This document shows, piece after piece, positions 3,271-63,462 of a stretch of 64,000 nucleotides of DNA; position 1 is the first letter of the stretch, and each line of letters opens with the position of its first letter. The position numbers and the translations under genes are program-made. The notes below the pieces were generated by a model. The model saw nothing but the letters and a program-made list of their open reading frames with translations, did not search any database and was not told the origin of the DNA. This DNA comes from Haliotis rufescens (taxonomy: Eukaryota): NCBI RefSeq assembly GCF_023055435.1, contig NW_025964361.1, positions 23,064,001 through 23,128,000 of the forward strand, read 5' to 3'.

Positions 3271-3370
3271 TTATCCTGGACTGGCGCTTGAATAAGCAGC
3301 CCCAGTTTTGTCTTGTACTGCACAGATGCTCACCCAAGACACAGGACACTGAAATAGATTTCATGTGAAG

Positions 3371-39505: not shown

Positions 39506-40479
39506 TAACATCTGCATCACTTCGGGTTTAAAACGTCACGCTGAGACGCAGTGATTTAAATCATATATTGTTCAATGCGGTGTAAAACGTTACTCACTCA
39601 CTCATAATCCTGAACATACATTTTGTACACCCTTGATCGTCATATTGAATACATTTTGAATACATTTCTAAGTTATAAATACTATTCATGCGTGCATGTC
39701 TTCAATAAACGAGCAGCTTTCTTTATAAGCTGCCAAATATGTTTACTTGGTGGTCAAATAGCATCTGAATGATTATAAAAATGCAAACATAGGCTACATT
39801 TAAGTAACACGTACTTAAATATCGGCGGTTTTAATGTGCTCCTGTACAAACACACCCCAATATATTCTGTTTTTCCAGATCTCGCTGAAAGTCATATCAA
39901 TATCACCGGGAACACGGGTGCGTGGATTGCGACAGAGACACTCCCGTGTGTGTGTGGAGGGGGCAGAGTCGATACCACTCCATAAAATTACCAAACTGAA
40001 ATTGCTTATGATGTGTACAAACCAAAATATTGACTTCGGTTCTCGTCAGTGGCAACCGGTTGTCTGGCATGTGTTTTTGAATGACACCGACATAGTGAAA
40101 GAGCTACGATACTAACTTAAGGATCTTGCCTGTCACAACTGTAGCTATTCAGGTGAGTTGTTTTGTTTTATGTTGACGATTGACCTAAAGACACAAACTT
40201 ATAAGTGACCTATAGATGGCCTAGAAGATAAGCACTTATTAAGATGCTGCAATCTGTATTATAAAATCTTGTTGTACGACTGTGTATTTCCAGCGATTTG
40301 TTTTGGACAGGGTTTTATTGTACCGTGTTTAATACAGAGAGCTGGGCTACTTGACATAACCCCAGTGAAGATCACAGAACAAATACGACACTTAGGCAAA
40401 TGAAAAATATACATGTAGTCATCTTTTGTTCAGCTTTCGTTAGATCCGGATTAATTAATCATTGAATAGCTTTGAATAT

Positions 40480-43400: not shown

Positions 43401-43675
43401 ATCCCAGTGTAACGTCCGTTAGTATATACATGTATATAGACGATCCGAGTGTAACGTCCGTTAGTATATACATGTATGTAGACGATCCCAGTGTAACGTC
43501 CGTTAGTATATACATGTATGTAGACGAACCCCGTGTAACGTCCTTTAGTATATACATGTATGTAGACGATCCCAGTGTAACGTCCGTTAGTATATACATG
43601 TATGTAGACGATCCCAGTGTAACGTCCTTTAGTATATACATGTATATAGACGATCCCAGTGTAACGTCATTTAGC
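40480..43675. repeat. 42-bp minisatellite (TAGTATATACATGTATGTAGACGATCCCAGTGTAACGTCCTT), about 76 copies, with a 714-bp higher-order period
   Basis: Tandem units; variant markers recur 714 bp apart (41261/41975, 41391/42105). Confidence 0.98.
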
Positions 43676-43865
43676 ATAGACATGGAGGGCTGGGATTTTA
43701 TCGAAAATATTACATTACATCCCAAAAAGGAAATTGCCTGCCACCAAAATTACATTGTTGCAAGATGTTTTTAAATAGAAATCAGGCCTATAGTTGATAT
43801 ATGACTGTTGCACGTCATATCATGTCTTGATCAGTATTTTCTATTTGAAATGTATTCGCCCCAGA

Positions 43866-46800
43866 ATGTCTCACGAATGCTGGAGGTACAACTCGTCCGA
43901 TGTTGCCATCAGGACTGTCTTCTCGTGCTCCTGTGGTTGCTGTGGTGACGCTTACCAAAGATTCTGCTGTGATACGTCGTTCTGTGATCCAAACGGAAGA
44001 TGCAGGTACGTTCTGTAAATCCAAAAAGGTGTGGTTATGTTCTGCGACCCGCATGGAAGATAGAATTTATTACAGTCTGTGATCCAAATGGAAGCTGTTC
44101 TGTAAAGTTATGTTATATCCTTGGATGTATATGTATAATGCCGATGTACCGTTGATAAGTTCACTCTCTCCTTTTGGTGATATATAGTTACACTCTATTG
44201 GAAGCTCTAGTAACGTTCTGTTATCCCCACAGGGTACTGTTACCTTCTGTTATATCTATAGATTTACACTCTCATCAAAATCAGATCCTAGTTTTCGCTA
44301 CCGCCATTAGAAAACACATTCCGACTGTCACTTTCATGATCTGGTAAGCGACGCTCTGATTGGTTCGATGAAAGGTCCTTCTGACGTGACCAGTAATGGG
44401 ATGTCCTCAGATCTTTGTTTAGCGACAACGAGAACTAAGATCTGATTTTAATGAGATTGATAGATTTAGATCAGTACATGGCTCAGGTAAGTTGTGATGT
44501 TTAACTTTTACTCACTTCCTCTATTGATGGCGTTGTTACGTTGTGGAAGCCGTTTTATGTTATGTGATCCAAATAGACATTGTAGTTGCGTCATGATGCG
44601 GTCACTCTAGCTTCATGATACAGACGATATTCCGAGTTTCGTCCCTGTGGCGCGTTAGAAACCTATTATTGTGGGTCGAATCCTAGATTGTTTCTAGGTT
44701 TGTTAGCACCAAACCCGTGCTCTTGGGTTTCACTAAGATGGCAAACGTCTGAGACCGGGCTTTCCTCCCACACAAGCTGACACGCGTGATATAATTGAAA
44801 TACTGTGCAATGCGGCTTTTAACACAACTCACTTGACCTATTTTTCACAAATCTTTGTATATCTGTTAATCTCAAGGTGCTCCTGCTTATACAAACAGCC
44901 ACAGTATTAAAGTCAATAACAAAGTGGACAGAAAGGAGGTAGACTTCGGTTGGTCACTATAACAAAGAACAGGATATAAACTGTCGGAAAAATTAAGACC
45001 AGTTGTTCTTGAGTAATGAGCCATTTCTTATAGCTAAAGTCTAATACATGTCCAGTAAGTGCATGAATAACGTATTTTTTCTATCTTCTTTCAGCGGTAT
45101 TTACCTAAGCCATGCCAGTGTAATAGCTCTTATATGCGTGTCCTCGCTGATATTGATTGGGGCAGGGGTGGCACTTGTCTTGGTGTGTCGGATGAAGAAA
45201 CGACCTTTCCTGTGGAAATCCGGAAGAACCCCTAAGGAAAAGATAAAAGAAATATTGAAAAGCGATAAAGGTAAAGAATGTTTCGGATGACATTTTATAG
45301 AAATACACTTTGTCACACTTTAAAATTGTATGCAATGATATTCGTCAAGTGCGCCTTTTTTCGGATCTTGTTTCAATTGAGATCTGAAAAAAATAGTTAA
45401 TGTGCTTTTTGTTTGATAATGTCAACAATATTATTACATTTCAAGGGATAGATTCTTAAGGGATATTTTTTATCGTTATCAAAGGACTCCTTTATTTATT
45501 TTATGATTTATACAGATGACATTTTCGAAAAGGGAAATAATAACAATAACTGTCTGATATATATGTGAAATTGGCATTTCAAAGGGTTGTAGTGTAAGAA
45601 CAGTTGACTGTGCAGCTGACTTCCTATGAATACAAATATATAAAAGAAATACTTGAACTTAAATTATGAATCTAAACTCTGTATTTTAGAAAGCTTCACT
45701 TGATTCGCAGCATTACATGTCGTGATCACATGACAACATATATGCACTGCGTATGCCATATTTTCTGCCAACTCGCTGTCCCGTTACAACATATGTGCAC
45801 TTAGTGAGCCCTATTACCTGCCAACTCGCTGTCCCGTTACAACATATGTACACTTAATGTGCCCTATAACCTGCCAACTCGCTGTCCCGTTACAACATAT
45901 GTGCACTTAGTGAGCCCTATTACCTGCCAACTCGCTGTCCCGTTACAACATATGTAAACTGAGTGTGCCCTATAACCTACCAACTCGCTGTCCCGTTACA
46001 ACATATGTACACTTAATGAGCCCTATTACCTGCCAACTCGCTGTCCCGTTACAACATATGTACACTTCGTATGCCATATTACCTGCCAACTCGCTGTCCC
46101 GTTACAACATATGTGCACTTCGTATGCCATATTACCTGCCAACTCGCTGTCCCGTTACAACATATGTGCACTTCGTATGCCATATTACCTGCCAACTCGC
46201 TGTCCCGTTACAACATATGTACACTTAGTGTGCCCTATAACCTGCCAACTCGCTGTCCCGTTACAACATATGTATACTGAGTGTGCCCTATAACCTACCA
46301 ACTCGCTGTCCCGTTACAGCATATGTACACTTAATGAGCCCTATTACCTGCCAACTCGCTGTCCCGTTACAACCTATGTGCACTTCGTATGCCATATTAC
46401 CTGCCAACTCGCTGTCCCGTTACAACATATGTGCACTTCGTATGCCATATTACCTGCCAACTCGCTGTCCCGTTACAGCATATGTACACTTAGTGAGCCC
46501 TATAACCTGCCAACTCGCTGTCCCGTTACAACATATGTGCACTTCGTATGCCATATTACCTGCCAACTCGCTGTCCCGTTACAACATATGTGCACTTCGT
46601 ATGCCATATTACCTGCCAACTCGCTGTCCCGTTACAACATATGTGCACTCCGTATGCCATATTACCTGCCAACTCGCTGTCCCGTTACAACATATGTTCA
46701 CTTCGTATGCCATATTACCTGCCAACTCGCTGTCCCGTTACAACATATGTGCACTCCGTATGCCATATTACCTGCCAACTCGCTGTCCCGTTACAACATA

Positions 46801-47834
46801 TGTGCACTTCGTATGCCCTATTACCTGCCAACTCGCTGTCCCGTTACAACATATGTGCACTTCGTATGTCATATTACCTGCCAACTCGCTGTCCCGTTAC
46901 AACATATGTGCACTTCGTATGCCATATTACCTGCCACCTCGCTGTCCCGTTACAACATATGTGCACTTCGTATGCCATATTACCTGCCAACTCGCTGTCC
47001 CGTTACAACATATGTGCAGTTTGTATGCCATATTACATGCCATCTGACTATCCCGTTACAATATATGTTCACTTTGTATGCCGTATTACTTACCAACTTG
47101 TTATCCCTTTATAACATATAAATGTTTCAAGAAAAGTCTAAGATGACGATGAGGTTAAAAGTAGGTAATTAAAATATCTATAGTCACTGTGCTAACGTGC
47201 AGTGAAGGTGATTAGACAATCTACTTCAGTAAATTAGTCACAATAATATAGAGATTTGTTGCATAAATGGCATGATTGACAATATAATATCTACTGTTTA
47301 TGTACCAGTAGAAGTCATATGATTCAATAAAGAGTTTGACAATTTGAAGTTATAACATGAATATTACCTTCCCTTTCTTCGTCTGCCTGGTAAAATGTCT
47401 CTTTTTGTGATATGTGTTGTACAGACTACTCTAGATAGGCTGGGGCAACGGTGGTTAAAGCTTTCGCTCGTCAGTCACGCCGAATACCCGGGTTTGACTC
47501 CCTACATGGGTACAATGTGTGAATCCCATTTCTGGTGTCCCCCGCTGTGATATTGCAGGAATATTGTTGAAAGCGGTGTAAAACCATACTCACGTAATAT
47601 ATATGCTACTTATCGCTGTATGTGTGCATATGTTATACAGACTACTCTGGAGAAGATGGCAGCAGTACCTCAGACCATCCGTATTACATCTACCCAGATT
47701 TCCCCCTGCCCCAAGACTTACAGATGCAGAAACATATGCAGCTGCAGACACAGACACAATCGCAGACACAGCAAGAGCAGCTGCAGACTCAGATACGGTC
47801 ACAGACACGGAAAGAGCAGCTGTCCTATTGCTGA
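43866..47834 (+). CDS. Cys-rich single-pass membrane protein, CYYR1/Shisa-like paralogue X, join(43866..44005,45095..45270,47641..47834); 5' end and last exon uncertain
   Basis: Exon MSHECWRYNSSDVAIRTVFSCSCGCCGDAYQRFCCDTSFCDPNGRC ends AG|GTACGT (phase 2) and joins in frame to TTCTTTCAG|C GIYLSHASVIALICVSSLILIGAGVALVLVCRMKKR... (TM helix plus basic stop-transfer), ending G|GTAAAG (phase 1). In-frame Tyr/Pro/Gln-rich exon at 47641; an alternative last exon at 45516 is also in frame. Confidence 0.68.
44268..44458. mobile_element. Unclassified MITE with ~30-bp TIRs (ACTCTCATCAAAATCAGATC...)
   Basis: ACTCTCATCAAAATCAGATCCTAGTTTTCG pairs with CGAGAACTAAGATCTGATTTTAATGAGATT. Confidence 0.75.
45733..47120. 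repeat. 53-bp minisatellite (ACAACATATGTGCACTTCGTATGCCATATTACCTGCCAACTCGCTGTCCCGTT), about 26 copies
   Basis: Tandem units; ORFs between 45965 and 47121 are cyclic translations. Confidence 0.97.
47442..47593 (+). mobile_element. SINE family A
   Basis: Matches 25123-25284. Confidence 0.9.
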
Positions 47835-48191
47835 CAGACGATGATTCATGCCTGAAAACCCGCCACGAGCATGTAGATAGACACGACGAGCAATGGCGTA
47901 GTCCTCAATGAGCCATGTCACCGGTTGATATATGACGTCACTTTTGTAAGAACTTTGTTGCGGCTGAGAAGATTATGCGTTACGTGACAAGAACAACACA
48001 AACACAAATTATCCTACACAGGGAACTTACGCCCTAATAATTGTAATACAATGGTTCAATGTAGTTCTTCTACAAACCATCAGTAGACGGGTGTGTCTTG
48101 ATTCACGCCCAGTCAACTCCAGCTACATCGGGGTAAAGATCGTGTCTGCGCCAGGTAATCCAGCGGTTCAGACCGCCGGGCCAGCGGGGGT

Positions 48192-48243
<52 letters not shown>
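48192..48243 (+). repeat. Poly-G homopolymer (52 nt)
   Basis: Directly visible. Confidence 0.9.
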
Positions 48244-48244
<1 letters not shown>

Positions 48245-49429
48245 GTCAAGTCTCACGTGGTAACCACCACACCGGCACTCACGCCAAGCATGGGGCACTT
48301 ATGATCTGTGCTGCCTGGCATTCCCAATTGGGAGAGATGAACGACGCGAGAACTATATATATATATATAATATATATAACGCCAACGCAAGGGAACAAGC
48401 AGCGTCGACCATCCGCAGAAACATATTTCACTTAATGTTCTCGACACTACAAACACAATTATATTGAATGTGCTTATTTATTCTGTTGGATCTGTGTATA
48501 TATGTAGGAAATAGAAGTGTGCACCATTTCAGCTACACCTGGATGTCTTCCGTTAAAGAACATTATTACCCTTAATTTATTGACATTTCAACTGGCATTC
48601 TATTCTGGTAACCTCACTTTGTTGAGGTGTATGTTGAACAGAAACATTTATGGAGTGATATGATTTTTATAGTTGGTAGCCCCACTGGGGTTGACCTGTG
48701 ATATTTCGGAGAGCGCTGTCATGACAAATGTCTATCCTATAACTTCAGTGGCACAATCACATGTTACAGTATCTATCTTATAATCTTAGGACAACCTAGC
48801 ATAATGCATGAAATGCAACAGTATCCTGAAGCTACTGTTCCCATTGATTCACAAGGAATCGGTGTAATGTATATGTAACTGTCACGTAGATATACAGTCG
48901 TCGCCCAGAAGGTGAGGTCTCCACACTAACAATGTCCGAACTTCCGGGTAGTACTATATATGCAATACACGTAGCTAGCCTGATATATGTCAAAGCTAGT
49001 CATTGTCGTCTATCACAGACATGTGCACAGTTATATTGTGTGTCACGTAAGAATGTGCTAGATAACAAAGCATGAAGCGTTTGGACTTGTTTCAAGAGTT
49101 AGATTATGTCCGCATGATACGTGTGTGGTTCAGAAAGAACAGTGGAGACGCAACACTAGGCAGGGAGTCAATCCCGGGATAAACCTATTCTCACCAATTC
49201 CGAGTACTTATATGCATACAAAACAATCTCGTGAACCGGACGATGTGAAAGTTAACACATTGTTTATGTTAAAGAGGAACCCATAAACGAATAATCTTCA
49301 GAAATACTTTTCATTTGGCTATATCTAGACTTTTCTTATCCCTTTCCGGTATTGCGAATGCTGTCGAAGCATTTGCCGATAAATGAGCTAAAAGAGAAGA
49401 GGAGTGTTGAATGTCTTTGGGTTAAGTCA

Positions 49430-50930
49430 GTGATGTAGTCATTGATAGAATGCACAAACTGAAAAAGGAGACACAGAATTGGAATAAACCCGTTCTGTCC
49501 AAGTCAGCTGCCATCCAACGTATGGCTGCCCTGCATGAAAAGTTTGCAGTTGCTCTCACTTACAAGGCCTCAGATAACATAACCATTATATGTAAGCATC
49601 AATTGCAAGCATCAATTGTTTGATCAAAGAACTTGGTATAAGTGACATATCAAATAATGCCACATATAAGGCCAGTATGTTAACTGAGGATGAAATCTGC
49701 CAAAACCATGCATCAGTTCTATCAACTTTGACTTGACTCTAAAACCTGTCCATTCCACTGGTACAAAGAGAGATACATTGCCGGGTCCAGCAAATGTTAC
49801 ACCAAATCCCTGTCTCGATTATTAACCATAATTCTTAATACAATCAAGGAAGGACTTCCTCTATATTCACAGAAAGTATTGTGACAAGTGGAATTAATAC
49901 CACTATCCGCAAAAACTCAAAGGATTTGCTTGACTTTTTACAATCTCAGAAAGGAACCAGGTTCAATTCTGTCAAAACACTTGAATTTTCAACTTTGTCC
50001 ACCACTATCTCACATGACAAATTTAAGAAAAAACTTCATTCCTTGATCCATGGGGCTTTTGTTACAAAACTAAAGATACAGTTCGATATCTATCCAGAGG
50101 TTCCGGTCAATTTGTCAAAAATGAAAGCAAATGCGATCTGAAGTGTACTGAGAAAATATGTGAAATACTGGACTTCTTCATTGATAACATCTTTGTAAAA
50201 TTTGAGGGGAAAGACATTTAGGCAAGAAGTAGGCATCCCCAATGGGCATCAATTGTGCTCCCCTTCTTGCGGATCTGTTTCTTTATGCATATGAGTAAGA
50301 ATTTCTGTTCGGATTAGCAAATTCAAAACAAGGTTATTTGGCCAAGAAGTTTAACTTAAGCTTCAGGTATGTCGATGATCTGATATCGTTCAATAACCAT
50401 CACACATCCAATTCCCTTCCACTAATTTACCCTCCTGAACTAGAAATAAAGAAGATCAGTGAGACTGCTTCATCTGTTTCATATTCAGATCTATGCATAA
50501 AGATTCAGAATAACAAAACACTCTCCACAAAACTGTATGACAAGAGGGATGACTTCAACTTTTCAATAGTCAAATTTCCCTTTATGATGAGCAATATTCC
50601 TGCAGCTGCAGCCCTTATCGTCCATATTTCACATTTTTAGGTACAAACGAGCATGCATTTCTACCAAGATTTCACAAAGCGTCATATGTCTCTTGCTCAA
50701 AGTTGTTTCATCAAGGTTACAACATTCAAGGCCTTAGTTATGAGGTCAAAATGTTTTATGGAAGACATGTAGAGGACATTTCCAAATTTGCCGCATCCGT
50801 GACAAGAATAATGTCCAATGCAATTCCTTATTTTGACCTGTACCATATGTTCCCGTGTTTTTGCTGGTGAAGAATTATTGACTAATGTCTTGCTCCTCTC
50901 AGGCAGGATACGCTTACCTGGTACCACCAC
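49430..50930 (+). mobile_element. Decayed Penelope-like retroelement reverse transcriptase (Naiad-like type, tentative)
   Basis: Motifs across broken frames: KASDNITIICK, YKERYIAGSSKC, KNSKDLL, KTLEFSTL, FIDNIFVKF, QEVGIP/MGINCAPLLADLFLY, FRYVDDL, LYDKRDDFNFSIVKFPFMMSNIP; many stops and frameshifts. Confidence 0.9.
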
Positions 50931-52592
50931 TATTTCATAGTGATTCATAAACACATGCTCATGATATGGTCGTAATCGTACAATCGACTCCGATTCGGCA
51001 GAGATTACTAATGATTATTAAAAGGGTGTCAAGGCTTTTATTTACAGTAATCCGGAAGCAGGATTTACGATGTCCGGACTATATCTTCGATTTTCTGTGT
51101 TGTCCTTACTACCATTCAAATGGAGTTAGTCACTATACATTCCAGACATTCAACGATGGATTGCTGTAGACATAAAAAAGCTAAAGAACATTCTAACAAC
51201 AAACAGCCATCAATGGCTATCTTTTGAAAAAATATCGATATGATACCTAATCTTATAATGAAAGTATCATTTGTCTCTTGTGTGTCACTAACTTCGGGTT
51301 TGAAATTTGCATAAGAAAAGATACATGATGCACTATGAAATAATATCTCGACGTCGAAGCGTTCAGCCCAGAACAGACATTGTGCTGTGTAACAGAGCGA
51401 ATTAACACACTCAACACGTTTAGGACTTTAGGTTTGTCGAAGCACTTAACGGTTTATACATACACTTCTAAGAGCCAGACACATTCAAAAAGCTATTTGC
51501 ATTCGGTATAATTGGTTATGCTAACTAATGACATTTGTAGCAACAAAATAGTCCCAGTTGAATAGCAAGTGATGTCGTGTCAAATAACAACTGAAGGAAT
51601 ATACACAATATCATTTCTAGTAACAATGGTTCTCCAACTAATGATATGCATACACAATCGGGATCAGTTCATGGAAAGATGATTATTTAACCTACATTGC
51701 TCAACTACTGAATTCATAGTCCAATCCATAAGAAACTAATCTCGCCTTTGTGCACTCTAAATGTATAATGGGTTCCCTCTGAGGGTTGAATATTATACTC
51801 GTGTGAATATTGGCTGTCACTCTTGATGTAATATGCATGTAGTTTGCGAGATATACACTGCACTATACTGCAAGAAAAAGCCTCAAGTACATGCGCTTAC
51901 CACTGCCTCCGTGGTCTAGTGGTGGAGTGTCTGCCCGGAGTGCGGAGGGTCATACCAAAAGACGGTAAACGATGGTACTTGTTGTCACCCTGCCTGCCGA
52001 TCCAGCAAGGACTAGTCGGCTCCAAATCAGTATACTGTGCCTGAGTAGGGTATTAATTTTAAACTGCTTCAAGATATCTCAATAAGCTCTCTCTATATAT
52101 AAGTGCAATGATCTTAAATCCCATTTCAATGACACCATGTGTTCGCGAAAAGGATAAGCAAAGTCTTCAATAACAAAAGGACTACTAATATCCTTTAGTA
52201 CTCGATAGAAACGCCCAGAACTAAGCACAGACAATCGGAATAATATTTTCGTTAGTGCGGGTCAACGGTCGAGTTATAATCGTAGAAAACGTTCAGGCCT
52301 TTTCGTCCTTGTTACACGTCCAACCTGCCTTCAGCGACAATGTGCTAGGGCCAGGGTGTGGCGTACTCTGTGTGTCCGACCTGACAGAGAGTGGCCGATA
52401 CGTTAATCTCTATCACGTCAACATAGTTTTAACCTCACGTTTGTCAACATTGTCCCCCTCGAACTCCTAGTGACGGGTCGGTTGTGCGTGTTGTGTGGTC
52501 AGTTTCTATGCTAAACAATGCTATGTAAACCAACATTTGGCAACTTTTGTATAGTGTCATTACTACATTGTATTTGGTCCTATGAGAACACT

Positions 52593-55051
52593 ATGGGCAT
52601 ACATGCATCCTTCTTCGCCCTTCTTGCGACATTTGCTGCAATAACAGGTCAGTAGACTAAGTCTTTGTGCCCTGATACCATCACAATACCATATAGATAT
52701 AAGATGTTTACAGTGCTGTGTATAGATTTTGGAAACTAAATAAAAAGTTATTTTGAGGATGAATATATTTTTGAGCGATTGAAAAATTTATCACTTTAGG
52801 AATTCCCAGAAAGGTAAATATTTATATGAGTCACACGAGTACACAAGAACCAACTCAATTCTTCTGTACAAAGTTGTTTGAAAGCTCATTTTATACATCA
52901 TCAGAATTAATGTAACAGTTCAATTTCATTTGGTCAAGCGAATACAATGAACTAGTGTGCAAATAATTTATTAAATGGTGCTACAATTGCATGTTAGCAT
53001 TGCATGAATACAGACGTTTAGAAAAATGGCTTTGGAATAATATTCACATTTTCTTGTAGGCGTCGATTGTCAGTATGGCAGCGCTGCACTTAACGCGGCG
53101 GCCGGAGCGGCCTTGCATACTGCTGGTGCAGCCACTGGCATTGTCAGGTATATGGTCGTCCGAAAACCAGCACTACCGTACAGTACAGAATTTGTATTCT
53201 CTCAAATATACACATGGTGACAGAGAGAACATACATCATAACATCATATATGCACACATGATATATACAAGTCAAAACAAACACAGACACTTTTTAGTTT
53301 AGTTTGAGAGTTTACCTAGCAGGGGTACATAATCATTTTGCATTATATATTTTAACTGTGGGATTGGTACCCAAAAAATGGAATTCATTACATATTGTTA
53401 AATTACACAGATTACATAGTCTATTTTCTTTTTTTATGTCATACCATCGTCCGGTCTCAATAGGGAGTCTGTGGTTTGTTGTTCTTATTTAAGTGAGTGA
53501 ATGGTATCCTCCAAATTAAAAGTGCCTGTCTAGTATCCACTTGAATGTAAGGGGACTTACAAGTATGCCCATCAACGTAAGGGGATTCACTAGTATGCCC
53601 TTAAACGTAAGGGTTTTCACTCGTTTGCTTTTGAATGTAAGGGGATTCACAAGTATGCCCATCAACGTAAGGAGATTCACTGGTATGCCCTTAATGTAAG
53701 GGGATTCACTCGTATGCCCTTGAATGTAAGGGGATGCACTCGTATGCCCTTAAATGTGAGGGGATTCACTCGTATGCCCTTGAATGTAAGGGGATTCACT
53801 CGTATGCCCTTAAATGTGAGGGGATTCACTCGTATGCCCTTGAATGTAAGGGGATTCACTCGTATGCCCTTAAATGTGAGGGGATTCACTCGTATGCCCT
53901 TGAATGTAAGGGGATTCACTCGTATGCCCTTAAATGTGAGGGGATTCACTCGTATGCCCTTGAATGTAAGGGGATTCACTCGTATACTCGTGAATGTAGG
54001 TTGGTTCACTGGTATGCCCCTGAATGTAAGGAGGTTCACGAGTATGCCAAGGAATATAAGGAGCTTCACAAGTATGTGTCCTCTTGAATTCATTGCTATA
54101 GTCTTCGACGTGACGGGAATTGACTAATCTAATAATATGACAATACGGGTAGGCTACTCTTGTACCTTGGGAATGCACAAGCATATTCCTGCACGTAACG
54201 AGAGGCTACTAGCTGACAAGTATCCTCAGGGTTAGCCTTAGATGACTCGGACACCCCTGTCCCTCAACTGGTTGTAGAAATAAACCTGGCATCACGATCC
54301 CATACACGTGTTCAACGTTCAATGCTTACTTGCTCAATAAACTTTCCCCCTGTTATCATATTAAGTGACCACTTTAGAAAAAATGTTTGGCAATTATAAG
54401 TTTATTTTTATCGCGACCAACGGCCCTCTGTTTTTAGAAAAAGGGTAATTAAGCTGGAAATAGAATTAACAAAATAGAATTTAAAATAACCTTAATTTTA
54501 CTTTGGTATTGTTCTCACAGTAAAGGGTTAAGCACAGTTATCATCGTCGTGATCGTCATCGCCGTCCTCATCGTTCTGGCTGTCATCGGCTGCATCATCT
54601 GCTGTGTAGTCAGTTGCTCCAAGGGAAAGAGGTCGGGAAGGGTTATCGCACCTGTGAACACCCAACCACAAGTGACAGTCGCGACAACCACTGGTAGGCC
54701 GTAACTTGTTTCTAATTTCTTTTGCCCAATGCTCATGGTCAAGCTCTTACACATAGGTTCACCACATCCACCTGTTCGACTGAGGTTTGTCCGCCATTCG
54801 TTCCAGGATCTGATGATCAATTAATCGAATTAAGATTCGCTCGATTATAACTGTTGATCTCGATTCAACTTGTTAGACAATTTTCATCTATATTATGCGT
54901 TGAATGGCGTTGAAGGCGGACCCAAACTCACTAGTATGTTTAGATCATGTATTGAGAGCATACAGGTCACAGTATAACATAAAAACACTTCTGGTTTTCA
55001 GTCCCTCCAGGAAACACTGGAATGGCACCGGTTCCACATCACACACACTAA
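52593..55051 (+). CDS. Small single-pass membrane protein, CYYR1/Shisa-like paralogue Y lacking the six-Cys ectodomain, join(52593..52647,53060..53147,54521..54693,55002..55051), 121 aa
   Basis: MGIHASFFALLATFAAITGVDCQYGSAALNAAAGAALHTAGAATGIVSKGLSTVIIVVIVIAVLIVLAVIGCIICCVVSCSKGKRSGRVIAPVNTQPQVTVATTTVPPGNTGMAPVPHHTH. Signal peptide, TM helix, juxtamembrane Cys cluster; GT-AG introns of phase 1,2,1 as in paralogue Z; AATAAA at 55675-55680. Confidence 0.87.
53540..54080. repeat. 30-bp minisatellite (GGGATTCACTCGTATGCCCTTGAATGTAAG) with alternating 60-bp dimers, in intron 2 of paralogue Y
   Basis: Units alternate between TTGAATGTAAG and TTAAATGTGAG across ~53730-53980. Confidence 0.96.
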
Positions 55052-55838
55052 CAGTTACAACAGCATACACGGGACACAGTGGCGGTGTCAGTCCTCGCCT
55101 ACAGCAGTAAACTGACTGTATCTAGTATTGACGTCATTGATAAGGAATAGGGGACACGGAACACCAACGTCAAAGACGCCACAATTCGCAATCCACAGAG
55201 TTGCGGTCCTTAGATATGTGCCAGAATTCTAAATCTCAGATTCGCCCTGAGGTAATTCTTGGTTTGCCAGCACAATACCCGTGCCCGTGGGTTTCTCCAA
55301 AGTGGTAAACGGCTAAGACCTTGGATAAATTCGAGCTTTCTCACCCCTTTGAGCTGGCACGCCTCGATATAACTGAAATATTGTTCAAAGCGTTTAAACC
55401 AAAACTTACTCAATCTTTTCAACTGAGATAATCTGATTTTATTTTTTTAAACTAAGATAACAATGGATTACAGGACCTTAAATTATGAGAGTCAGTTCAA
55501 TGATATGACGTCGTGTTTATAAGGACCGCTTCGTAAGGCACCAAGACTGAACATGGCGTGGATAAGCCAAATCATCGTAACACAATATTTATAAGTTTGA
55601 GTGAAAATAACCTTCCAATAGGTGATTGTTAACATATTATTCTGTGATTTAATAAGTTGTTATTTTATCTTGTGAATAAACAACACGTGGTATTTGGAAT
55701 ATGTTCTCTGATATGTACATCTCTGTCAGTACAACGCATTCTGCCATCGCTGGAGAACATCTTAATTCCGTCTCCATAAACCAATCTTAGCACTAAGATG
55801 ACAATAATTCCCAAAGTAACACAGTAACAGGCTGCCTA

Positions 55839-55971
55839 AGCACTATTCCAGCAGTATAACGGCGGGGGACACCAGAAATGGGCTTCACACATTGTATCGA
55901 TGCTGGGAATCGAACCCGGGTCTTCGGTGTGACGAGCGAACGCTTTAACCACTAGGCTACCCGAGCGCCCC
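55839..55971 (-). mobile_element. SINE family A (3'-truncated)
   Basis: Reverse match to the head and body of the 25123 copy; another partial copy at ~59315-59386(-). Confidence 0.88.
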
Positions 55972-57542
55972 AAGAGACGTTAAAAGATTGTTAAAGCTGA
56001 ATGTTTCACTTTTAATACAGTAAACTGACTCCGACCCAACTAGTCCTTGTTTTTAGCCCCTTATGCCGAGCGCCAAACAGGGTAACAACAAGTACCATCT
56101 TTTAACGTCTTTTGGTATGACGCGATCAGGGATCGGACCACTAGGCTACCCCACCGCCCCAACACACACAGTACATTGTAACTCGCACAGTATGTCCCAT
56201 GTTTTACTCAAGGAAAGTCGTAGCGTGAATATCGTATTGTCTAATGGCTCTCCTAAAACGTGGTGTATATTATGCTGATACATTTCCTAAATAAATCGAC
56301 GTAAAACACTATGTTTTAGATTATTTAGACACTTGTGCATGGCAGCACACTGAGTATTTCGAACATCCAGATCCTCCCTGTCCTGGCACACTGCATGCTC
56401 CGTTCATATTCATATGCAAATAACTTTCAGCAGGGCTTCTAGAAGTCTGTCGTTCAGGCCCAATTCCCTGTCGAGTTGGGTCTCTTATCCGTGACGGGTT
56501 CCAAAGATAGATTGGTCCTCAACCTGTCAGCACAATACCCGAGTTAGTGACGATCCTAGCCTAGATAATACCTTCATTTAAACATTAATTTTGTCTGTGA
56601 GCACAATGACCTTGTTCTTGGGAAACGTTCACCACCTGTGTCACACTCATTCACTAGAACTGAAATAGTGTTCGCTAACACCACTCATTCTCAGTATATA
56701 TATTTCATCGTGACCAATTCAGTTATAATCGCGTACAGACCGTATACGATTACTATTCTCAACCACCTCATGTATGTCATATGGACATATCGTTTACTGG
56801 CACAAGATTCACATCAAACTACACTTGTGATGCTTTTTCAACATGTTCATTAAATATTGAATCTCCAGTCCATCAGTAACTCAGTATTCATTCCTAATAG
56901 AGATCGGTTTCAATACATTGTTTGTTTATCTGTCGACTAGTAACACACCAACAGTCTGACTGCATGTGTACCTAGAACATTGATCCACGTCAGATAAATG
57001 TACCTTAGCATGTACCGTAGTACCTTACCGTTGTTCATTTGTCGTGATCAATTCCACATGTTATTACTTAAAAACAAACTATGTTAATCAACTGATAAGG
57101 GAAGATTTCGCTGAAAAGTATTAATAGTATATACGCTATTAGTTGCAAAGTGAAGAGATTATTTGCTTTGAAATGCTTCCTTATTCATTGCAATAAACGG
57201 AATCTCTATCTCAAGCTGGTTTCACAAACCGTTTGTCCAGGCCAGACAGATAATAGACTCCATGCCGTGATGCTTATGCCGGCCACTGGAAGCCATTCGG
57301 TGATCATGGGTGAGGTATTTGATACCACCGCCACTAACACTATTACGTCTGAACGGACAGTCTACAATCAAGCACGGTCGGGATTAACAACTTGAGCTTA
57401 TATCTGTATCAAGCGCGAGTCATTGCATGAAAGAACGCCATGTTGGATATAAAACATATAACAATTGTAATTAGTAGATATTGTTTGCAAACCTATAACA
57501 TTTCATATCTTTCAATATATTTACACGCAGATAACACAGAGA

Positions 57543-57870
57543 CACCAACACAATGTCTGTCACAGAAACCATGTTGGCATTCACTGTCTAATGTCACCAA
57601 CACAATGTCTGTCACAGAAACCATGTTGGCATTCACTGTCTAATGTCACCAACACAATGTCTGTCACAGAAAACATGTTGGCATTCACTGTCTAATGTCA
57701 CCAACACAATGTCTGTCACAGAAAACATGTTGGCATTCACTGTCTAATGTCCCCAACACAATATCTGTCAAAGAAAACATGTTGGCATTCACTGTCTAAT
57801 GTCACCAACACAATGTCTGTCACAGAAAACATGTTGGCATTCACTGTCTAATGTCCCCAACACTATGTCT
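57543..57870. repeat. 52-bp minisatellite (CACCAACACAATGTCTGTCACAGAAAACATGTTGGCATTCACTGTCTAATGT), about 6 copies
   Basis: Tandem units. Confidence 0.93.
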
Positions 57871-58300
57871 CCGTCACAGACAACGAAGAGAACCAAACAC
57901 TATGCCTCTGCCAAAGACAACGAAGAGAACCAAACACTTTGTTTCTGCCACAGACAACGGAAAGAACCAGACACTGTGTCTCTACAATAGGCAACATGTT
58001 CTCATTCTATGCCACAAACAACAGAAAGAACCAAACACTATGTCTCTACAATAGGCAACATGAACTCATTCTATGCCACAGACAACAGAAAGAACCAAAC
58101 ACTATGTCTCTGCAATGGGCAACATGTTCTCATTCTAAGCCACAGACAACAGAAAGAACCAAACACTGTCTCTGCAATGGGCAACATGTTCTCATTCTAT
58201 GCCACAGACAACAGAAAGAACCAAACACTATGTCTCTGCAATGGGCAACATGTTCTCATTCTATGCCACAGACAACGCAGAGAACCAAACACTGTCTCTG
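57871..58300. repeat. ~64-bp minisatellite (GCCACAGACAACAGAAAGAACCAAACACTATGTCTCTGCAATGGGCAACATGTTCTCATTCTAT), about 5 copies plus shorter lead-in units
   Basis: Tandem units contiguous with the preceding array. Confidence 0.9.
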
Positions 58301-59032
58301 ACACAGTCAGCCTATTGACATTCACTATATAATGTCTCCAATATTATGTCTTTGTCACAGACAAAAAGCAGAGAACCAAACAGTATGTCTCTGTAGGTTA
58401 ACATGTTAGTAGATAACCTCCAAATCTTCCTTAGTTTCATATATCCCCAAACGCCTAGTGTCTTTTGAAACAAATGTACATTTGAAATTGAAATCATTTT
58501 GATATATAGATCTATATATGTAACTTTCCACAAATACCAAGACGAGTGGGTAAAAAGACCACTGTAAATTTATCCTTGTGCTCCAATTTTTGAGTCTGTC
58601 CTAATACTTGGAAGGGTAGTCAGTTAACTATTATTACAAAACAGGTACAACATGTGTAAATAAAAAATCAATTTCGGGATCTGAATTCGGGATCAGTGTG
58701 TAATTATTTTGTAAAGAAAATCAAATTTTGATGAAACGATTGTGATGAAAATATAAATTTAGTCATGCTATTATATTTTCTGTTGTATGCTGTAAACACC
58801 AGATGATGGACTGATTTGTTGATTGTAGTAATCATATTACCAGAACATATGTGTCATGTTACGGAGTACCATCCATGTTTGATCACAACACACGCAGAGG
58901 TCGTGTGAGGGCGTCAAGGACAGCGTAAAGGGCAACAACGTGATGACACAGGTTAATGTCATTTGCCTTTCAGAAAGGTTAAAGTCATCTCGATTTGTAT
59001 TTAATTCCAGACATGGCTACCCAGAGCATCCC

Positions 59033-59202
59033 TCACACATACACATACACACGCGCGCGCGCACGCACGCACGCACGCACGGAACAAAGAGACCCACACT
59101 CATACAGACACAGACACACACACGCGCGCGCACACACGCACACGCACACGCACGCACGCATGCACGCGCACACACACACACACGCACGCACGCACGCACA
59201 CA
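59033..59202. repeat. Compound (CA)n/(CG)n/(CACG)n microsatellite
   Basis: Directly visible. Confidence 0.92.
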
Positions 59203-60199
59203 AAGCCTTTGAACAATGAACATTTAGCAGGAAGGGTGTGCGTGTGTGTACATTGTTTTTTTGCAATGCGTTTTAAACAATATCGGTGAAGGAACATCCC
59301 AAATATGCTTTAAATATTGCACCCATGTGGAGAATCGAACCTGGGTCCTGCGCGTGGCGAGCGAAGACTTTAACCATAAGGCTACCACACACAGGAAGGG
59401 AATGTACAGGCATATCTATTGACGTCTAAGTAACACAATGCAATGAAAGGTATGTCGACCAGGACATGTCCTCGATGTTGTGATCCTGGGCGCAAGTAAT
59501 CAAGTAATCATTTAGAGACGTGGATATATATCTCCATCTACACTCGAACTAGATTAACTACTGTGTATAACTGACCTTGATTTCTGTCATTTCGTTCGCC
59601 TAAATTAGTTTTTACATGTGAGACGTTTTATATCAGCGTTTCTTTTGGATGCCGCTATACATCTCGCTTGTTTAATGGCGTAAAACACTTGTCTTTTACT
59701 TCATCTTCTTCAAAGTACATCAATAGACGCGTAATGAGGACGTTTCTTTATAAATTAATATTTTTAGTAAACAATAACTCTCAAATTATTTTGAATGTAT
59801 CAAATTAGGGAATCAATTCTTTTTGCAAAAACACGATCTTAATGAGTTGCATTCTTCTACTCAAATATCCATGACTCCCAAACACACACATGTAATGCGT
59901 TGATTAATATTTACATGACGGGTATCAACGTCAGTGTATCAACGTGGTAACAGTCAGCCCGACTACCACGATCCCACATACCGCTGTTCCAGTTTCACAT
60001 ATCAAGTTGATATTTAGCATCTGTTCCCGTTTATCGTCCACGATCTGCTTATAGAGATATTGATTTCTCGTCACTGTTTCTGCATAGTAGTTATCAACAT
60101 CAGACATGCATTTGATATAGTTGAAACTGCTTGATCAAACCACCTTTATGATTTGTTTGAAAGCTTCAGGGTGTTCAGTGAGTATGCTTGAGCACTGAC

Positions 60200-63100
60200 A
60201 TGGAGGATACACCGAGGTTTTTGTACAACATTGTGTTGTCAGTGGTAACGCTTCTTATTAAAGGTGAGTGCATCCGTTATTGAGTAGGAACTCGTCTTAT
60301 GTCTACTGCAGTAGAATCCGCTTTATACGACGTTGATTAATATGTTACGTTAACGTTCAGCGTCAGGAGACATTGTTGTATCATACCACCATATGTCTGA
60401 CCTCAGATAGACACTGTCTCATCTCTGAGGGGGGAAGGCTAAACTTACGATTTACATGCGCACTGCTTGTGATTTGCATACCAACCCTTCATACTCTGGC
60501 GAAAACTAGGGTTGGGAGCGTTTGTTTCTCAATCACAACCACAAAGAACTTTTCAACGCACGTCACATGTGTGTAATGTACTAACCATTGCTTTCTATAT
60601 CTTACTTACATGATTAACATACATTGTTGTTTATAACAACTATGTAAACAAACCCCGAACAATCGGAACAAGTGATCGAAAGAAAACAGATGTTTGGAAA
60701 AGAAATAATTGCGATCGGGGTATATGCGAAACAAAAAATAACTATTTTTTGTCTAACCTGTATGTAAACGTATTTTATTGGACTTCTTTTCTAATCAAGA
60801 CATGTAACTGCTGGCAATTCATAGTCATGTAGTCGCACTTTCAGTTTGATCTACATGAGGTCATGTGTACACTTCTTCCCTGTCAGACACTGCAGCAGTC
60901 ATCTGCTACAACCGGGCAGGTTCTGTCACATGTCCTGTCAAGTGCTGTCCGGGCTCTGCCGCAGTGTCTTCCATACTGGGCGTGTGCTGCAGCAGTACCG
61001 GCGGAAACATGCTCCACACAGCGGACAACATAGCAGGGGCAGTCAGGTAATTTAGCTCCCTTGTGAGTCAGACCTGGGAAACCAATTGTTTGCTTCACAG
61101 ATACGACGGCGACACATATATAAACGTGACAAAAATATTTCCATAATCATATGAAATGTCTACTTAAAACAGTCCATTGTACGATTCCGACTATATCATC
61201 ATCCTAATTATTTATTACAAGGTATCCCTGGTATACATACACAGAACCACAAAAGAAATGAATATAATTCAGGTTATTGCATGTCAATAAACATTTCTAA
61301 AAAACGTGAGACATCATCTAGCCAATAAGCAGGATACTGCGACAGTTCCCAGACACTCATCATGACACTTATCTGGGATAGGGACGCACTTGATGAGGGC
61401 GTCATTGTAGCTCAGTGTTAGTTGTGTACTAGTCATGAAAGAGTCCTCATGTTAACATCCTGTATGAAGTCCTGAGTGAATTTAGCAGTAATTGGACGGA
61501 TATTGTCTTGCTGAAATACGTGTGGAGAAAAGTGTTTCAGACCAACTGCATCCCATATCATGATACTAGAACGACCCCACTAACCTCTCCCTATAACACA
61601 AGCATTGACATACGGCAGTGGAATGCAGTATCTGCACATCCTGAGAAACTAGCCTTCCTTAGTGTTGCTGATCACGCCATTTGCCATGTGGATTTACCTA
61701 CTGTTTCTACATTTGCGAGCTGAAGGGGCGGCAACTCGGGTAGCAATGAATGCTACTGGCTGCAAGACTTTGCCTAGCTATATCATCACTCTCTGGTCTG
61801 CCATGGCTGCCGAAGGGCCGCAATTTGGAACCTGTTTGTCAAGAAGAGGTCACTCGTGGACTTTCCCTCTGTTGCCGCTTAATGGGCTGTTTGTGGTATT
61901 GAAACGTTCATTCAGACGTGGATGTCTCAGTCAATGTAAACTAACTGTGACTCTGTCTGGACACTGATTACCTGATGTCGGGGGTTTCTCTGTAGGATTG
62001 GCATGACTGTTTTACTCATATACCAAATGGCAGGATTTAGAAGTGGATTAATTTTTATACCACATGCATCTCGTGCAAGTCCTCCTCGTGACGCATGCCG
62101 AAATTCAACCCCATGATTCTAGTCGTGCGCTCGATAGACCTCTAACCAACAAGCTGGCCCCTAACATTTGCCTTTTTCGTCATGCTATATTCGTTGGCGC
62201 CAAATTATAATTAAACAGTTACGTTAGATTTAACATTTATGAAATTTGCGTTGTAGGAACATTTAACTGTTTGAGTGCTTGAAACGTATGATATGTCATT
62301 GTGGCTTACAGGTACATATTTTGGTGATAAACATGTTACCTGTAATTACACCTTTGTGTCTTTGCAAAACACAAACATGAGCAAATGAAACTGTGCTGGC
62401 GATATTCACGTCACCATGTCGTGAATGTTCTCATTTTGAGAAAGTTGATAATCAGTAAGAAAAGTATACATCTCAGTGAAATATCTCCAGGTTCGAATCC
62501 CTAAATGTACATGTTCTTTAATCAGATTGCTGCATTTCATTTGCTTTATAGTGTTAAAAACATACGTCAAATTGAAACAAGGAATAGCGATATAGATACT
62601 TTTCAAATCTTAATAACATTTTTTTTTTATTTACAGCAAAGGATTAAGCACCATTTTCATTATCATCATCGTCGTAGCTGTCATCATCGTTTTGGGCATC
62701 GTTGGGTGCATCGTATGTTGCGTTTGTGGTTGTAGCAAGCGAACCAATGGTGCAATTGTCGCCCCTGCCGGCAATCAGCCTCAAGTGACGGTTGTGTCTG
62801 CGTCCGGTAAGGAGGATAGATAAATGTGTTCATTTTCAGTTCATTTTCTATAGTTTCAGTGTGTGAATAACACTAAAAGTTTTTAAAAACAAACTGACAT
62901 AATGTTCTCTACACTTGCTCAGTATTATGTCTACATGCAAATATGTCATTATAACCAGTCTTGGTCAGTCAATTTATCCATCGTGACATACCTAAAATAA
63001 GATTTGTTTGCTTAATTGTTTGTTTCTTTTTTTAACGCCTCCATCATTAGTATAGCAGCCACATGACGGCTACTTGTAAATAATCGATTCTGGATCGGAA

Positions 63101-63462
63101 AATATAGTGTTTGATACTGTGAACAAAGTTCCACTCGGCTCATACAATTGACTCTTTCAACACATAGTTATTATGATTAAAGGTATTGTCGCTCTTGTTA
63201 TGATTATTTTATATGTCATCAGAAGACACGGACATGAGTTGTGAAACATACATGGTCGTCTCCAAAATCAACCCCTAACCACTACATGATACAAACAGAA
63301 GGATAATGTGGACAATAGTATCTACTACTACAATATTAATTAGTTGACCTGCTATTAATGTCATGGTGTCTAACGCGCGTACATTGTAAACAGACTTGAT
63401 GCTTTCCATTGACAGAACCTGCACATCAAGGAAACCCAAGGCTGGATCAAGGCCCACCCTAA
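60200..63462 (+). CDS. CYYR1/Shisa-like (STMC6) single-pass membrane protein, paralogue Z, join(60200..60263,60887..61046,62637..62806,63416..63462), 146 aa
   Basis: MEDTPRFLYNIVLSVVTLLIKDTAAVICYNRAGSVTCPVKCCPGSAAVSSILGVCCSSTGGNMLHTADNIAGAVSKGLSTIFIIIIVVAVIIVLGIVGCIVCCVCGCSKRTNGAIVAPAGNQPQVTVVSASEPAHQGNPRLDQGPP. Signal peptide, C-C-CC-CC ectodomain, TM helix, Cys cluster; canonical splice sites, phases 1,2,1. The last exon is less certain. Confidence 0.88.

What the first reader, a model, noticed from the sequence alone, without database searches (positions are those of the whole stretch)
43866..63462. Hidden tandem cluster of three small single-pass membrane genes with a variable ectodomain exon
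Seen: three same-strand spliced genes (X, Y, Z) that the ORF track largely misses. Each has an ectodomain exon, a phase-2 intron, a TM exon and a phase-1 intron. The TM exons of Y and Z are clearly paralogous (KGLST...GCI.CC...CSK...AP...QPQVTV), yet the ectodomain exon differs sharply: 9 Cys in X, C-C-CC-CC in Z, none in mature Y. Established: C-C-CC-CC plus TM plus a cytosolic Cys cluster marks the STMC6 group (Shisa-like, CYYR1, WBP1/VOPP1, TMEM92), which act as membrane adaptors. Inference: a lineage-specific array diversifying its outer face on a conserved membrane anchor, as expected of a variable surface recognition or adaptor system. This is the best candidate here for an undescribed system.
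Basis: partly seen in the sequence, partly recalled or inferred. Interest (0 to 1): 0.75.

Follow-up and report, generated by a model that had tools for sequence, protein, structure and literature searches.

The report
Abalone CYYR1-like small membrane genes
The stretch holds three real, small, spliced single-pass membrane genes of red abalone; two are already annotated tandem paralogues of the CYYR1/Shisa-like adaptor kind that lack the usual ligase-binding motifs, and the third is a different Shisa-like gene, so this is an ordinary gene family and no new system.

Summary
Partly confirmed, but ordinary. Y and Z match two named RefSeq proteins of Haliotis rufescens at 100%: LOC124137519 and LOC124137520, both 146 aa and "uncharacterized". 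They are therefore not hidden.

Each has four coding exons: signal, ectodomain, TM and tail. Mature Y has 1 Cys, not none.

The TM exons are paralogous (55% identity). They align with abalone TM exons that pass Pfam CYYR1 (hhalign 96.9%) and share the same intron phases. None of the 5 Y/Z proteins has a PPxY motif.

X shows no detectable sequence homology to Y/Z (hhalign 1.3% and 0.3%). Its Cys exon is Shisa_N-like but below the cut-off, and it has a paralogue 23 Mb away. One RNA contig joins its TM exon to a new tail exon (47641-47834). Its first junction is unseen.

The "diversifying outer face" idea is not supported. Between H. rufescens and H. rubra, Z's Cys domain is the best conserved part (46 of 47) and the tail the worst (8 of 15).

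A TM-exon profile finds 28 matches in the genome, 17 of them on this contig. The scan noted a similar CYYR1/Shisa-like cluster before, 35.6 Mb downstream (s1-807710).

The parts
43866..44005 (+). Gene X, Cys-rich exon. It has 9 Cys with the core CxCGCCGD...RFCC and a phase-2 donor CAG|GTACGT. ATG 43866 may be the start, since no signal exon was found.
   Evidence: Sequence read. Pfam Shisa_N gives E 0.005, 17.3 bits against a cut-off of 22. A paralogous exon lies at G000:C583:46004423 (E 0.0094 genome-wide; pairwise E 5e-10). No RNA contig lies on it in 3 of 3 RNA-type runs. No signal-like first exon was found in 36000-43900.
45095..45270 (+). Gene X, TM exon, with a phase-2 acceptor and a phase-1 donor.
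   Evidence: RNA-type contigs lie on 45168-45268 (X1 record 7) and 45186-45268 (X3 record 13). There is no paralogue in the genome, and it is not hit by the family TM profile.
47641..47834 (+). Gene X, Gln-rich tail exon with stop TGA at 47832-47834.
   Evidence: X1 record 7 (261 nt, 0 mismatches) joins 45168-45268 to 47639-47798. The shared AG places the junction at the canonical GT..AG sites 45270|47641. No [LP]PxY is encoded in this exon.
52518..52647 (+). Gene Y exon 1, the signal-peptide exon. The model starts at ATG 52518; a second ATG at 52593 gives a more typical signal. The donor CAG|GTCAGT is phase 1.
   Evidence: tblastn of P0001 gives 100%; sequence; scan.
53060..53147 (+). Gene Y exon 2, a short Ala/Gly-rich ectodomain exon with 1 Cys, phase 1 to 2. 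It is 72 nt shorter than Z's exon 2.
   Evidence: Similarity to Z's exon 2 is weak (pairwise E 0.003), and the aligners disagree on where the gaps lie.
54521..54693 (+). Gene Y exon 3: TM helix, a juxtamembrane Cys cluster and the QPQVTV motif. Phase 2 to 1.
55002..55051 (+). Gene Y exon 4, a short Pro-rich tail with stop TAA at 55049-55051.
60200..60263 (+). Gene Z exon 1, the signal-peptide exon, with a phase-1 donor AAG|GTGAGT.
60887..61046 (+). Gene Z exon 2, the six-Cys ectodomain (C-x9-C-x3-CC-x12-CC). Phase 1 to 2.
   Evidence: It has no other copy in the genome and no Pfam match.
62637..62806 (+). Gene Z exon 3: TM helix, Cys cluster and the QPQVTV motif. Phase 2 to 1.
   Evidence: AlphaFold2 predicts a helix at residues 77-110.
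63416..63462 (+). Gene Z exon 4, a short tail with stop TAA at 63460-63462.

Best explanation
Y (LOC124137519) and Z (LOC124137520) are tandem paralogues of a divergent CYYR1-like subfamily of the STMC6/Shisa-like kind, so far found only in Haliotis. Each is a 146-aa type I membrane protein built from four small exons: a signal peptide, a small ectodomain, one TM helix and a short Pro-containing tail. The TM helix is followed directly by a Cys cluster, a basic stretch and a conserved ...AP...QPQVTV motif. Z keeps the six-Cys ectodomain. Y has a 24-codon shorter exon with one Cys.

X is a separate gene of the same layout. Its ectodomain is of another, Shisa_N-like type and its tail is Gln-rich.

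Shown here: the exon structures, the Y/Z paralogy, the link to abalone CYYR1-like genes, the lack of PPxY motifs, and the TM-to-tail splicing of X.

Inferred: the proteins enter the ER, Z forms up to three disulfides, and the juxtamembrane Cys are palmitoylated as proposed for Shisa-1 to 5. They would then act as small membrane adaptors or modulators. Without PPxY they cannot recruit NEDD4-type WW ligases in the canonical way that CYYR1, WBP1 and VOPP1 do. They would have to work through the ectodomain, the TM segment or the conserved QPQVTV stretch, possibly by pairing with PY-bearing relatives or their clients.
For: P0001 and P0009 are named H. rufescens proteins and lie on the window at 100% in four exons each. 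Orthologues exist in H. cracherodii (both Y and Z) and in H. rubra (Z only). The Y/Z TM exons are 55% identical.

The TM-exon profile hit only 8 proteins at E<=0.001 among 1.84 billion. Three are Haliotis clusters and three are Hexamita proteins, one of which passes Pfam CYYR1 at 41.5 bits. Pfam CYYR1 finds a cluster at C583:11.53-11.64 Mb, with 7 of 9 genome hits there and 3 over the cut-off. The TM exons of that cluster align with Y/Z at hhalign 96.9%, E 1.4e-10, 51% identity over 49 columns.

The same phases, an ectodomain donor in phase 2 and a TM exon going from phase 2 to 1, were read in the TM exons of L001, L004, L005, L006 and L007 and in the ectodomain exons of L001, L005 and L006. 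CYYR1 is described as 4 small exons and 154 aa, with a signal peptide, a Cys-rich domain, a TM and PPPY motifs (PMC1863428, passages). [LP]PxY is found in 0 of 5 Y/Z proteins, whereas L009's downstream exon has 2.
Against: No Pfam model reaches its cut-off on X, Y or Z. CYYR1 gives 16-17.5 bits against 31, and only over the TM stretch. Shisa_N gives nothing on Z and 17.3 against 22 on X. Genome-wide Pfam scans do not list the window.

Profile matches that are largely TM helix plus Cys runs can be inflated by composition. Z's ectodomain against an abalone CYYR1-like ectodomain exon is weak and misaligned (E 0.008). The AlphaFold2 model is unusable outside the TM helix (pLDDT 44.6).

Expression of Y and Z was not checked with reads here, because the single read-laying run went to X. 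Palmitoylation, topology and any adaptor role are inferred only.
Confidence: 0.65

Rival explanations
1. One reading: a lineage-specific array that keeps a conserved membrane anchor and diversifies its outer face, forming a variable surface recognition or adaptor system.
For: The Y and Z ectodomain exons differ sharply, 1 Cys against 6 and 88 nt against 160 nt. The wider TM-exon family is sizeable and clustered: 28 hits, 17 of them on this contig. The Cys-rich exons differ between the clusters read.
Against: Only two detectable paralogues lie here. Z's ectodomain exon has no other copy. Between H. rufescens and H. rubra the ectodomain from the first Cys is 46 of 47 identical, against 51 of 57 for the TM exon and 8 of 15 for the tail. 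That is the opposite of a diversifying outer face. Y's ectodomain is 28 of 29 identical to H. cracherodii's.
Confidence: 0.1
2. Y is a decaying duplicate on its way to becoming a pseudogene. Having lost its disulfide domain, it is kept only by the annotation pipeline.
For: It has lost 5 of 6 Cys and 24 codons. No H. rubra orthologue was found (1 protein among 367 candidates). Expression was not checked.
Against: The reading frame, all six splice sites and the stop are intact. An orthologue with the same four-part structure exists in H. cracherodii, with 57 of 58 TM-exon residues identical. Those two species may be too close for this to weigh much.
Confidence: 0.15
3. X's Cys-rich exon does not belong to the transcript that carries the X TM exon. 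It may be a relic exon, and the real first exon of X lies elsewhere.
For: No RNA contig lies on 43866-44005 in 3 of 3 RNA-type runs. The contigs begin inside the TM exon. There is no signal peptide and no signal-like upstream exon. The only acceptor in front of the exon is phase 2, whereas the paralogue L006 has phase 1.
Against: The frame is open with a phase-2 donor that fits the TM exon's phase-2 acceptor. The spacing of about 1.1 kb matches the paralogue L006. The contigs are shallow (depth 4.7), so a gap proves nothing. The Hexamita CYYR1-like proteins also start without a signal peptide.
Confidence: 0.3

Closest known systems
[quoted passage not shown]
   Same: Both are small proteins (146 against 154 aa) from 4 small exons, with a signal peptide, a Cys-rich ectodomain, a single TM and Cys directly after the TM (PMC1863428 passages). 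Y/Z TM exons align with abalone TM exons that pass the Pfam CYYR1 cut-off.
   Different: Y and Z have no PPPY/PPxY motif (0 of 5 proteins). They have no Tyr-rich box. The Pfam score is about half the cut-off. Y has lost 5 of the 6 Cys. CYYR1 acts through its PPxY motifs on WWP1 (PMC11399591, passages), a route closed to Y and Z.
Shisa family (Pfam Shisa_N, PF13908)
   Same: Both share the layout of a Cys-rich N-terminal domain with CC...CC pairs, a single TM, and Cys at the cytosolic end of the TM proposed as palmitoylation sites (PMC10531659, passages). X's exon matches Shisa_N positions 2-39 of 50 at E 0.005.
   Different: X is below the cut-off (17.3 against 22 bits) and Z has no match at all. 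No PY or C-terminal PDZ-binding motif is present. The VTV in Y and Z is internal and not at the C-terminus.
WBP1 / WBP1L / VOPP1 / TMEM92 (other STMC6 proteins) and TMEM207
   Same: All are single-pass proteins of the STMC6 kind. TMEM207 is described as a relative without the canonical Cys-rich domain, a precedent for Y (PMC6125347, passages).
   Different: Those proteins carry PPxY motifs that bind WW domains (PMC6125347 and PMC11399591, passages). X, Y and Z carry none. No sequence comparison with them was run here.
Other STMC6-like clusters of the same abalone genome (C583:11.5 Mb, 58.6-58.8 Mb, 7.6 Mb; C68:25.2 Mb)
   Same: They share the exon layout and phases, the TM exon with a basic stretch, and the G-R-x-I/V...Q-P/x-Q...T-V motif.
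   Different: At least one of them (L009) keeps a Pro/Tyr-rich tail exon with 2 PPxY. Their Cys-rich exons carry the CCG...(R/K)YCC signature, which Z lacks.

Membership tests
STMC6 / Shisa-like superfamily (Pei and Grishin 2012, as described in PMC6125347 and PMC11399591) | Single transmembrane segment | tested here: met
   One run of about 23 hydrophobic residues lies in each TM exon. AlphaFold2 predicts a helix at residues 77-110 of Z with pLDDT about 77.
   Z has 6 Cys laid out C-x9-C-x3-CC-x12-CC. Y has 1. X has 9, including two CC pairs. This is a pattern match only, with no significant profile match for Z.
STMC6 / Shisa-like superfamily | Pro-rich cytosolic region with PPxY/[LP]PxY motifs | tested here: not met
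   [LP]PxY occurs in 0 of 5 Y/Z proteins and there is no Tyr after the TM. X's tail exon has none. The tails do contain 6-7 Pro.
Shisa_N (PF13908) | Score at or above the Pfam gathering cut-off (22 bits) | tested here: not met
   X's exon scores 17.3 bits, E 0.005. Z's exon and full-length Z have no match. The genome-wide scan lists 11 places, none in the window.
CYYR1 (PF10873) | Score at or above the Pfam gathering cut-off (31 bits) | tested here: not met
   Y scores 17.5 bits. The TM exons score 16.6 and 16.1 bits. Full-length Z has no CYYR1 match at E<=1. The genome scan lists 9 places, none in the window.
CYYR1 (PF10873) | Homology to accepted members through intermediates | tested here: met
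   Y/Z TM exons against abalone TM exons that pass the cut-off (32.9 and 31.1 bits) give hhalign 96.9%, E 1.4e-10. Hexamita proteins hit by the Y/Z profile at E 6e-7 to 1.5e-5 include one that passes CYYR1 at 41.5 bits. Caveat: the matches are largely TM plus Cys cluster.
CYYR1 (PF10873) | Four small exons encoding about 150 aa: signal, Cys-rich, TM, tail | tested here: met
   Y and Z have four coding exons each and are 146 aa. CYYR1 has 4 small exons and 154 aa (PMC1863428, passages). The intron phases of vertebrate CYYR1 were not available for comparison.
CYYR1 (PF10873) | Cys/Tyr-rich box and three PPPY motifs | tested here: not met
   Z's ectodomain has 1 Tyr and no PPPY.

The most novel reading that the evidence does not exclude
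Abalone has expanded the STMC6/CYYR1-like adaptor kind into several tandem clusters, with at least 28 TM exons, 17 of them on one 60-Mb contig. Within that expansion the Y/Z pair is a derived PY-less branch in which one copy has also shed its disulfide domain. Such stripped-down copies could act as natural dominant-negative or decoy partners of the PY-bearing relatives. That would be a lineage-specific way of tuning ubiquitin-ligase adaptors at membranes.
Probability: 0.12. Interest if true: 0.5.

Novelty: new member of a known kind. Interest (0 to 1): 0.25.

Why it matters
The gain is modest. CYYR1 was described as vertebrate-conserved (PMC1863428, passages), and no paper in the searched library links CYYR1 to molluscs. 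This work shows that abalone has Pfam-positive CYYR1-like genes plus divergent PY-less derivatives. That widens the known range of the STMC6 adaptors and gives natural variants, one without PY motifs and one without the Cys domain, for asking what each module does.

Tried and rejected
Pfam scans of all exon peptides and of the full-length Y and Z proteins gave nothing above a cut-off.

The ESM Atlas search with Z's ectodomain exon gave no usable hit.

A profile of the five Y/Z proteins against PDB sequences gave only chance TM matches, best E 0.027.

AlphaFold2 on Z with a 5-row alignment gave mean pLDDT 44.6, with only the TM helix confident. No fold search was run because it would be meaningless.

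The search for homologous proteins with X's 81-aa open frame found only an unspliced Logan ORF, P0010. That tool sees proteins of 45-141 aa for this query. X's product would be about 169 aa if it starts at ATG 43866, so a named model of X could not have been found this way. Whether X is in the public annotation stays unknown.

I considered that Y's signal exon might be Z's first exon, because both junctions are phase 1. I rejected this once the named models and the H. rubra orthologue showed that Z has its own signal exon.

I looked at organism C's DNA contigs for conservation of X's exons. Divergence is only about 1.4-2% and not all differences were listed, so the result is not informative.

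The DNA and protein aligners disagree on where Y's exon 2 lost its 72 nt. The history of that deletion is not resolved.

One literature search was badly framed and returned irrelevant papers. Pei and Grishin 2012 (PMC3295595) is not held, so its content is cited only through passages of other papers and recall. No supplementary files were opened. Supplementary Table 1 of PMC6125347, on the percent homology of STMC6 proteins, might bear on the family definition.
Full report
WHAT IS THERE. The window is G000:C583:23064001-23128000 of a 1.33-Gb animal genome. Two TM-exon frames, 54521-54693 and 62637-62806, are clearly paralogous. They are 55% identical at the protein level, with E 4.7e-14 in a six-frame search of the whole genome. 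At the DNA level only this exon is shared between the Y and Z regions. The other shared pieces are SINE-like repeats.

IDENTITY OF Y AND Z. A profile of the two TM exons was scored against 1.84 billion representative proteins. It gave 8 hits at E<=0.001.

- P0001 (146 aa) is named "uncharacterized protein LOC124137519 [Haliotis rufescens]", XP_046359808.1.
- P0009 (146 aa) is LOC124137520, XP_046359809.2.

Both lie on the window at 100% in four pieces each.

- Y: 52518-52647, 53060-53147, 54521-54693, 55002-55051.
- Z: 60200-60263, 60887-61046, 62637-62806, 63416-63462.

The splice sites were read. All are GT..AG, and the phases are 1, 2, 1 in both genes. The genes are therefore in the public annotation, and the window is H. 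rufescens or something indistinguishable from it at these loci.

Orthologues were found for Z in H. cracherodii (P0015) and H. rubra (P0003), and for Y in H. cracherodii (P0014). No Y orthologue of H. rubra was found. That result is limited by the tool's word filter.

Z's Cys exon has a phase-1 acceptor and no ATG. It needs the signal exon at 60200-60263. I predicted this exon by a donor and hydrophobicity scan, and the named proteins then confirmed it.

Y's signal exon ends at the strong donor CAG|GTCAGT after 52647, which is phase 1. It cannot join the phase-2 TM exon directly. The model uses a further 88-nt exon, 53060-53147, that encodes an Ala/Gly-rich stretch with one Cys. Mature Y therefore has 1 Cys, against 6 in Z.

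Y's exon 2 sits in the same place and has the same phases as Z's exon 2, but it is 72 nt shorter. Similarity between the two is weak (E 0.003). It rests on short shared motifs after the Cys and before the TM exon. The aligners disagree about where the gaps lie. It is wrong on the exon structure.

Reads were laid on X, because Y and Z had been settled by then. In run X1, record 7 (261 nt, 0 mismatches) joins 45168-45268 to 47639-47798. X3 record 13 also covers 45186-45268. The two letters AG fit on both sides of the joint, so the junction sits at the canonical sites 45270|47641. In phase 1 the new exon reads on to TGA at 47832-47834 and encodes a Gln-rich tail without any [LP]PxY.

The runs are contigs whose RNA nature is only guessed. 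Even so, a precise GT..AG deletion of 2.4 kb argues for RNA.

No contig lay on the Cys exon in any of the three RNA-type runs. The contigs are shallow (depth about 5), so this does not decide the matter.

X has no signal peptide, and no signal-like upstream exon was found. It may start at ATG 43866 as a signal-less, N-out protein, as the Hexamita CYYR1-like proteins appear to. Alternatively its Cys exon may be a relic.

For that reason, and because of the length window of the search for homologous proteins, I cannot say whether X is annotated publicly.

IS X A PARALOGUE OF Y/Z? By sequence it is not. hhalign of the five-protein Y/Z alignment against X's two exon peptides gives probabilities of 1.3% and 0.3%. 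X's TM exon has no relative in the genome, and the family TM profile does not find it.

X's Cys exon does have a paralogue at C583:46004423, with genome-wide E 0.0094 and pairwise E 5e-10 at 49% identity. It matches Pfam Shisa_N below the cut-off, at 17.3 against 22 bits. What X shares with Y and Z is the layout and the intron phases.

FAMILY PLACEMENT. No Pfam model reaches its cut-off on X, Y or Z. Genome-wide scans with Shisa_N and CYYR1 list 11 and 9 places, none of them in the window.

The CYYR1 scan did reveal a cluster at C583:11.53-11.64 Mb, holding 7 of the 9 hits, 3 of them over the cut-off. The TM exons of that cluster (L007-L009) have the same build as those of Y and Z: a TM helix, a CC-rich run, a basic stretch, and Q-x-Q-[LV]-T-V-V-S just before a phase-1 donor at the same position. 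hhalign of Y/Z against these exons gives 96.9%, E 1.4e-10, with 51% identity over 49 columns. Against the TM exons of a C68 cluster plus C583:7.63 Mb it gives 95.4%.

In front of those TM exons lie Cys-rich frames with C...C...CC...CC layouts. I read the ectodomain-exon donor as phase 2 in L001, L005 and L006. I read the TM exon as phase 2 to 1 in L001, L004, L005, L006 and L007.

One cluster member (L009) has a downstream Pro/Tyr-rich frame with 2 PPxY. None of the 5 Y/Z proteins has an [LP]PxY, or any Tyr after the TM.

CYYR1 itself is described as 4 small exons and 154 aa, with a signal peptide, a Cys/Tyr-rich domain, a TM and three PPPY motifs (PMC1863428, passages). It acts through PPxY on WWP1 and is counted among the STMC6 proteins (PMC11399591, passages). 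[quoted passage not shown]

I therefore file Y and Z as divergent CYYR1-like members of the STMC6 kind. The caveats are that the link runs mainly through the TM and juxtamembrane stretch, and that the PY motifs, the functional hallmark of the kind, are absent.

SIZE OF THE FAMILY. A profile of seven TM exons (A5) finds 28 places in the genome at E<=0.1. Seventeen are on contig C583, in groups at 7.6, 11.5, 14.6, 23.1 (Y and Z) and 58.6-58.8 Mb. Five are on C68 and six are singletons. These are lower bounds and include the seed sequences. My profile hits and my reading of L005 agree with that note.

DOES THE OUTER FACE DIVERSIFY? It does not do so between species. The identities, segment by segment, are below.

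Z, H. rufescens against H. rubra:
- Signal: 14 of 21.
- Ectodomain exon: 48 of 53, and 46 of 47 from the first Cys onward.
- TM exon: 51 of 57.
- Tail: 8 of 15.

Z, H. rufescens against H. cracherodii:
- Signal: 21 of 21.
- Ectodomain exon: 51 of 53.
- TM exon: 53 of 57.
- Tail: 14 of 15.

Y, H. rufescens against H. cracherodii:
- Ectodomain exon: 28 of 29.
- TM exon: 57 of 58.
- Tail: 12 of 16.

The Cys domain of Z is thus the most constrained part and the tails drift fastest. Only protein sequences were available, so no dN/dS was computed.

HOW IT LIKELY WORKS. What is shown is the architecture. What follows is inference from the Shisa/CYYR1 literature (PMC10531659, PMC11399591, PMC6125347, passages). 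The signal peptide would drive ER entry and N-out topology. Z's six Cys would form up to three disulfides. The Cys run at the cytosolic end of the TM would be palmitoylated. The protein would then sit in the secretory or endosomal membranes as a small adaptor. Without PPxY it cannot bind WW-domain ligases canonically. The conserved AP...QPQVTV stretch, the TM segment and Z's ectodomain are the candidate interaction surfaces. Y, with its ectodomain reduced, may be a modulator, or it may be a copy on its way out.

NOVELTY AND VERDICT. No paper names these loci or links CYYR1 to molluscs, but the genes are annotated and the kind is known. I rate this a new member of a known kind, with interest about 0.25.

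Noticed in passing
window 40484-43684: A 42-bp minisatellite of about 76 copies lies just upstream of X. It creates a spurious 856-aa open frame at 41204-43774.
   Followed up: no
window 45733-47119; 53533-54076; 57543-58300: Further minisatellites lie inside or between the genes. A 53-bp unit repeated 26 times sits in X's last intron. A 30-bp unit repeated 18 times sits in Y's intron 2. Units of 52, 64 and 126 bp lie between Y and Z.
   Followed up: no
window 47452-47567, 55857-55962, 59280-59386; also 44285-44484 and 44685-44884: SINE-like repeat copies are shared between the X, Y and Z regions. These repeats and two elements in X's first intron are extremely abundant in both the RNA-type and the DNA runs, with summed contig depth up to about 270,000 in bin 47485-47684.
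   Followed up: partly
window 10746-11621 (+): An uninterrupted 291-aa open frame looks like a Ser/Thr protein kinase domain. It was not searched.
   Followed up: no
window 12941-13760 (-): Two overlapping open frames look like remnants of a Tc1/mariner-type transposase. They were not searched.
   Followed up: no
G000:C583:11.53-11.64 Mb (L007-L009): A tandem cluster of Pfam-positive CYYR1-like genes lies here, with 7 hits, 3 of them over the cut-off. L009 has a downstream Pro/Tyr-rich frame with 2 PPxY. CYYR1 was described as vertebrate-conserved.
   Followed up: partly
L004 (G000:C583:7629000-7638000), about 2400-4490: Upstream of an STMC6-like TM exon, a tandem DNA repeat is open in several frames and repeats a Cys-rich ...CCGS...RECCS... 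unit many times. It may be a repeated ectodomain module or merely a satellite.
   Followed up: no
P0004-P0006, P0011, P0012 (Hexamita inflata); P0007, P0008, P0013 (marine eukaryote transcripts): Protist proteins have nearly the same TM-plus-Cys-cluster segment as Y and Z, at E 6e-7 to 9e-4 in a library of 1.84 billion. One passes Pfam CYYR1. Whether this reflects deep homology or convergence of a TM/Cys segment is open.
   Followed up: partly
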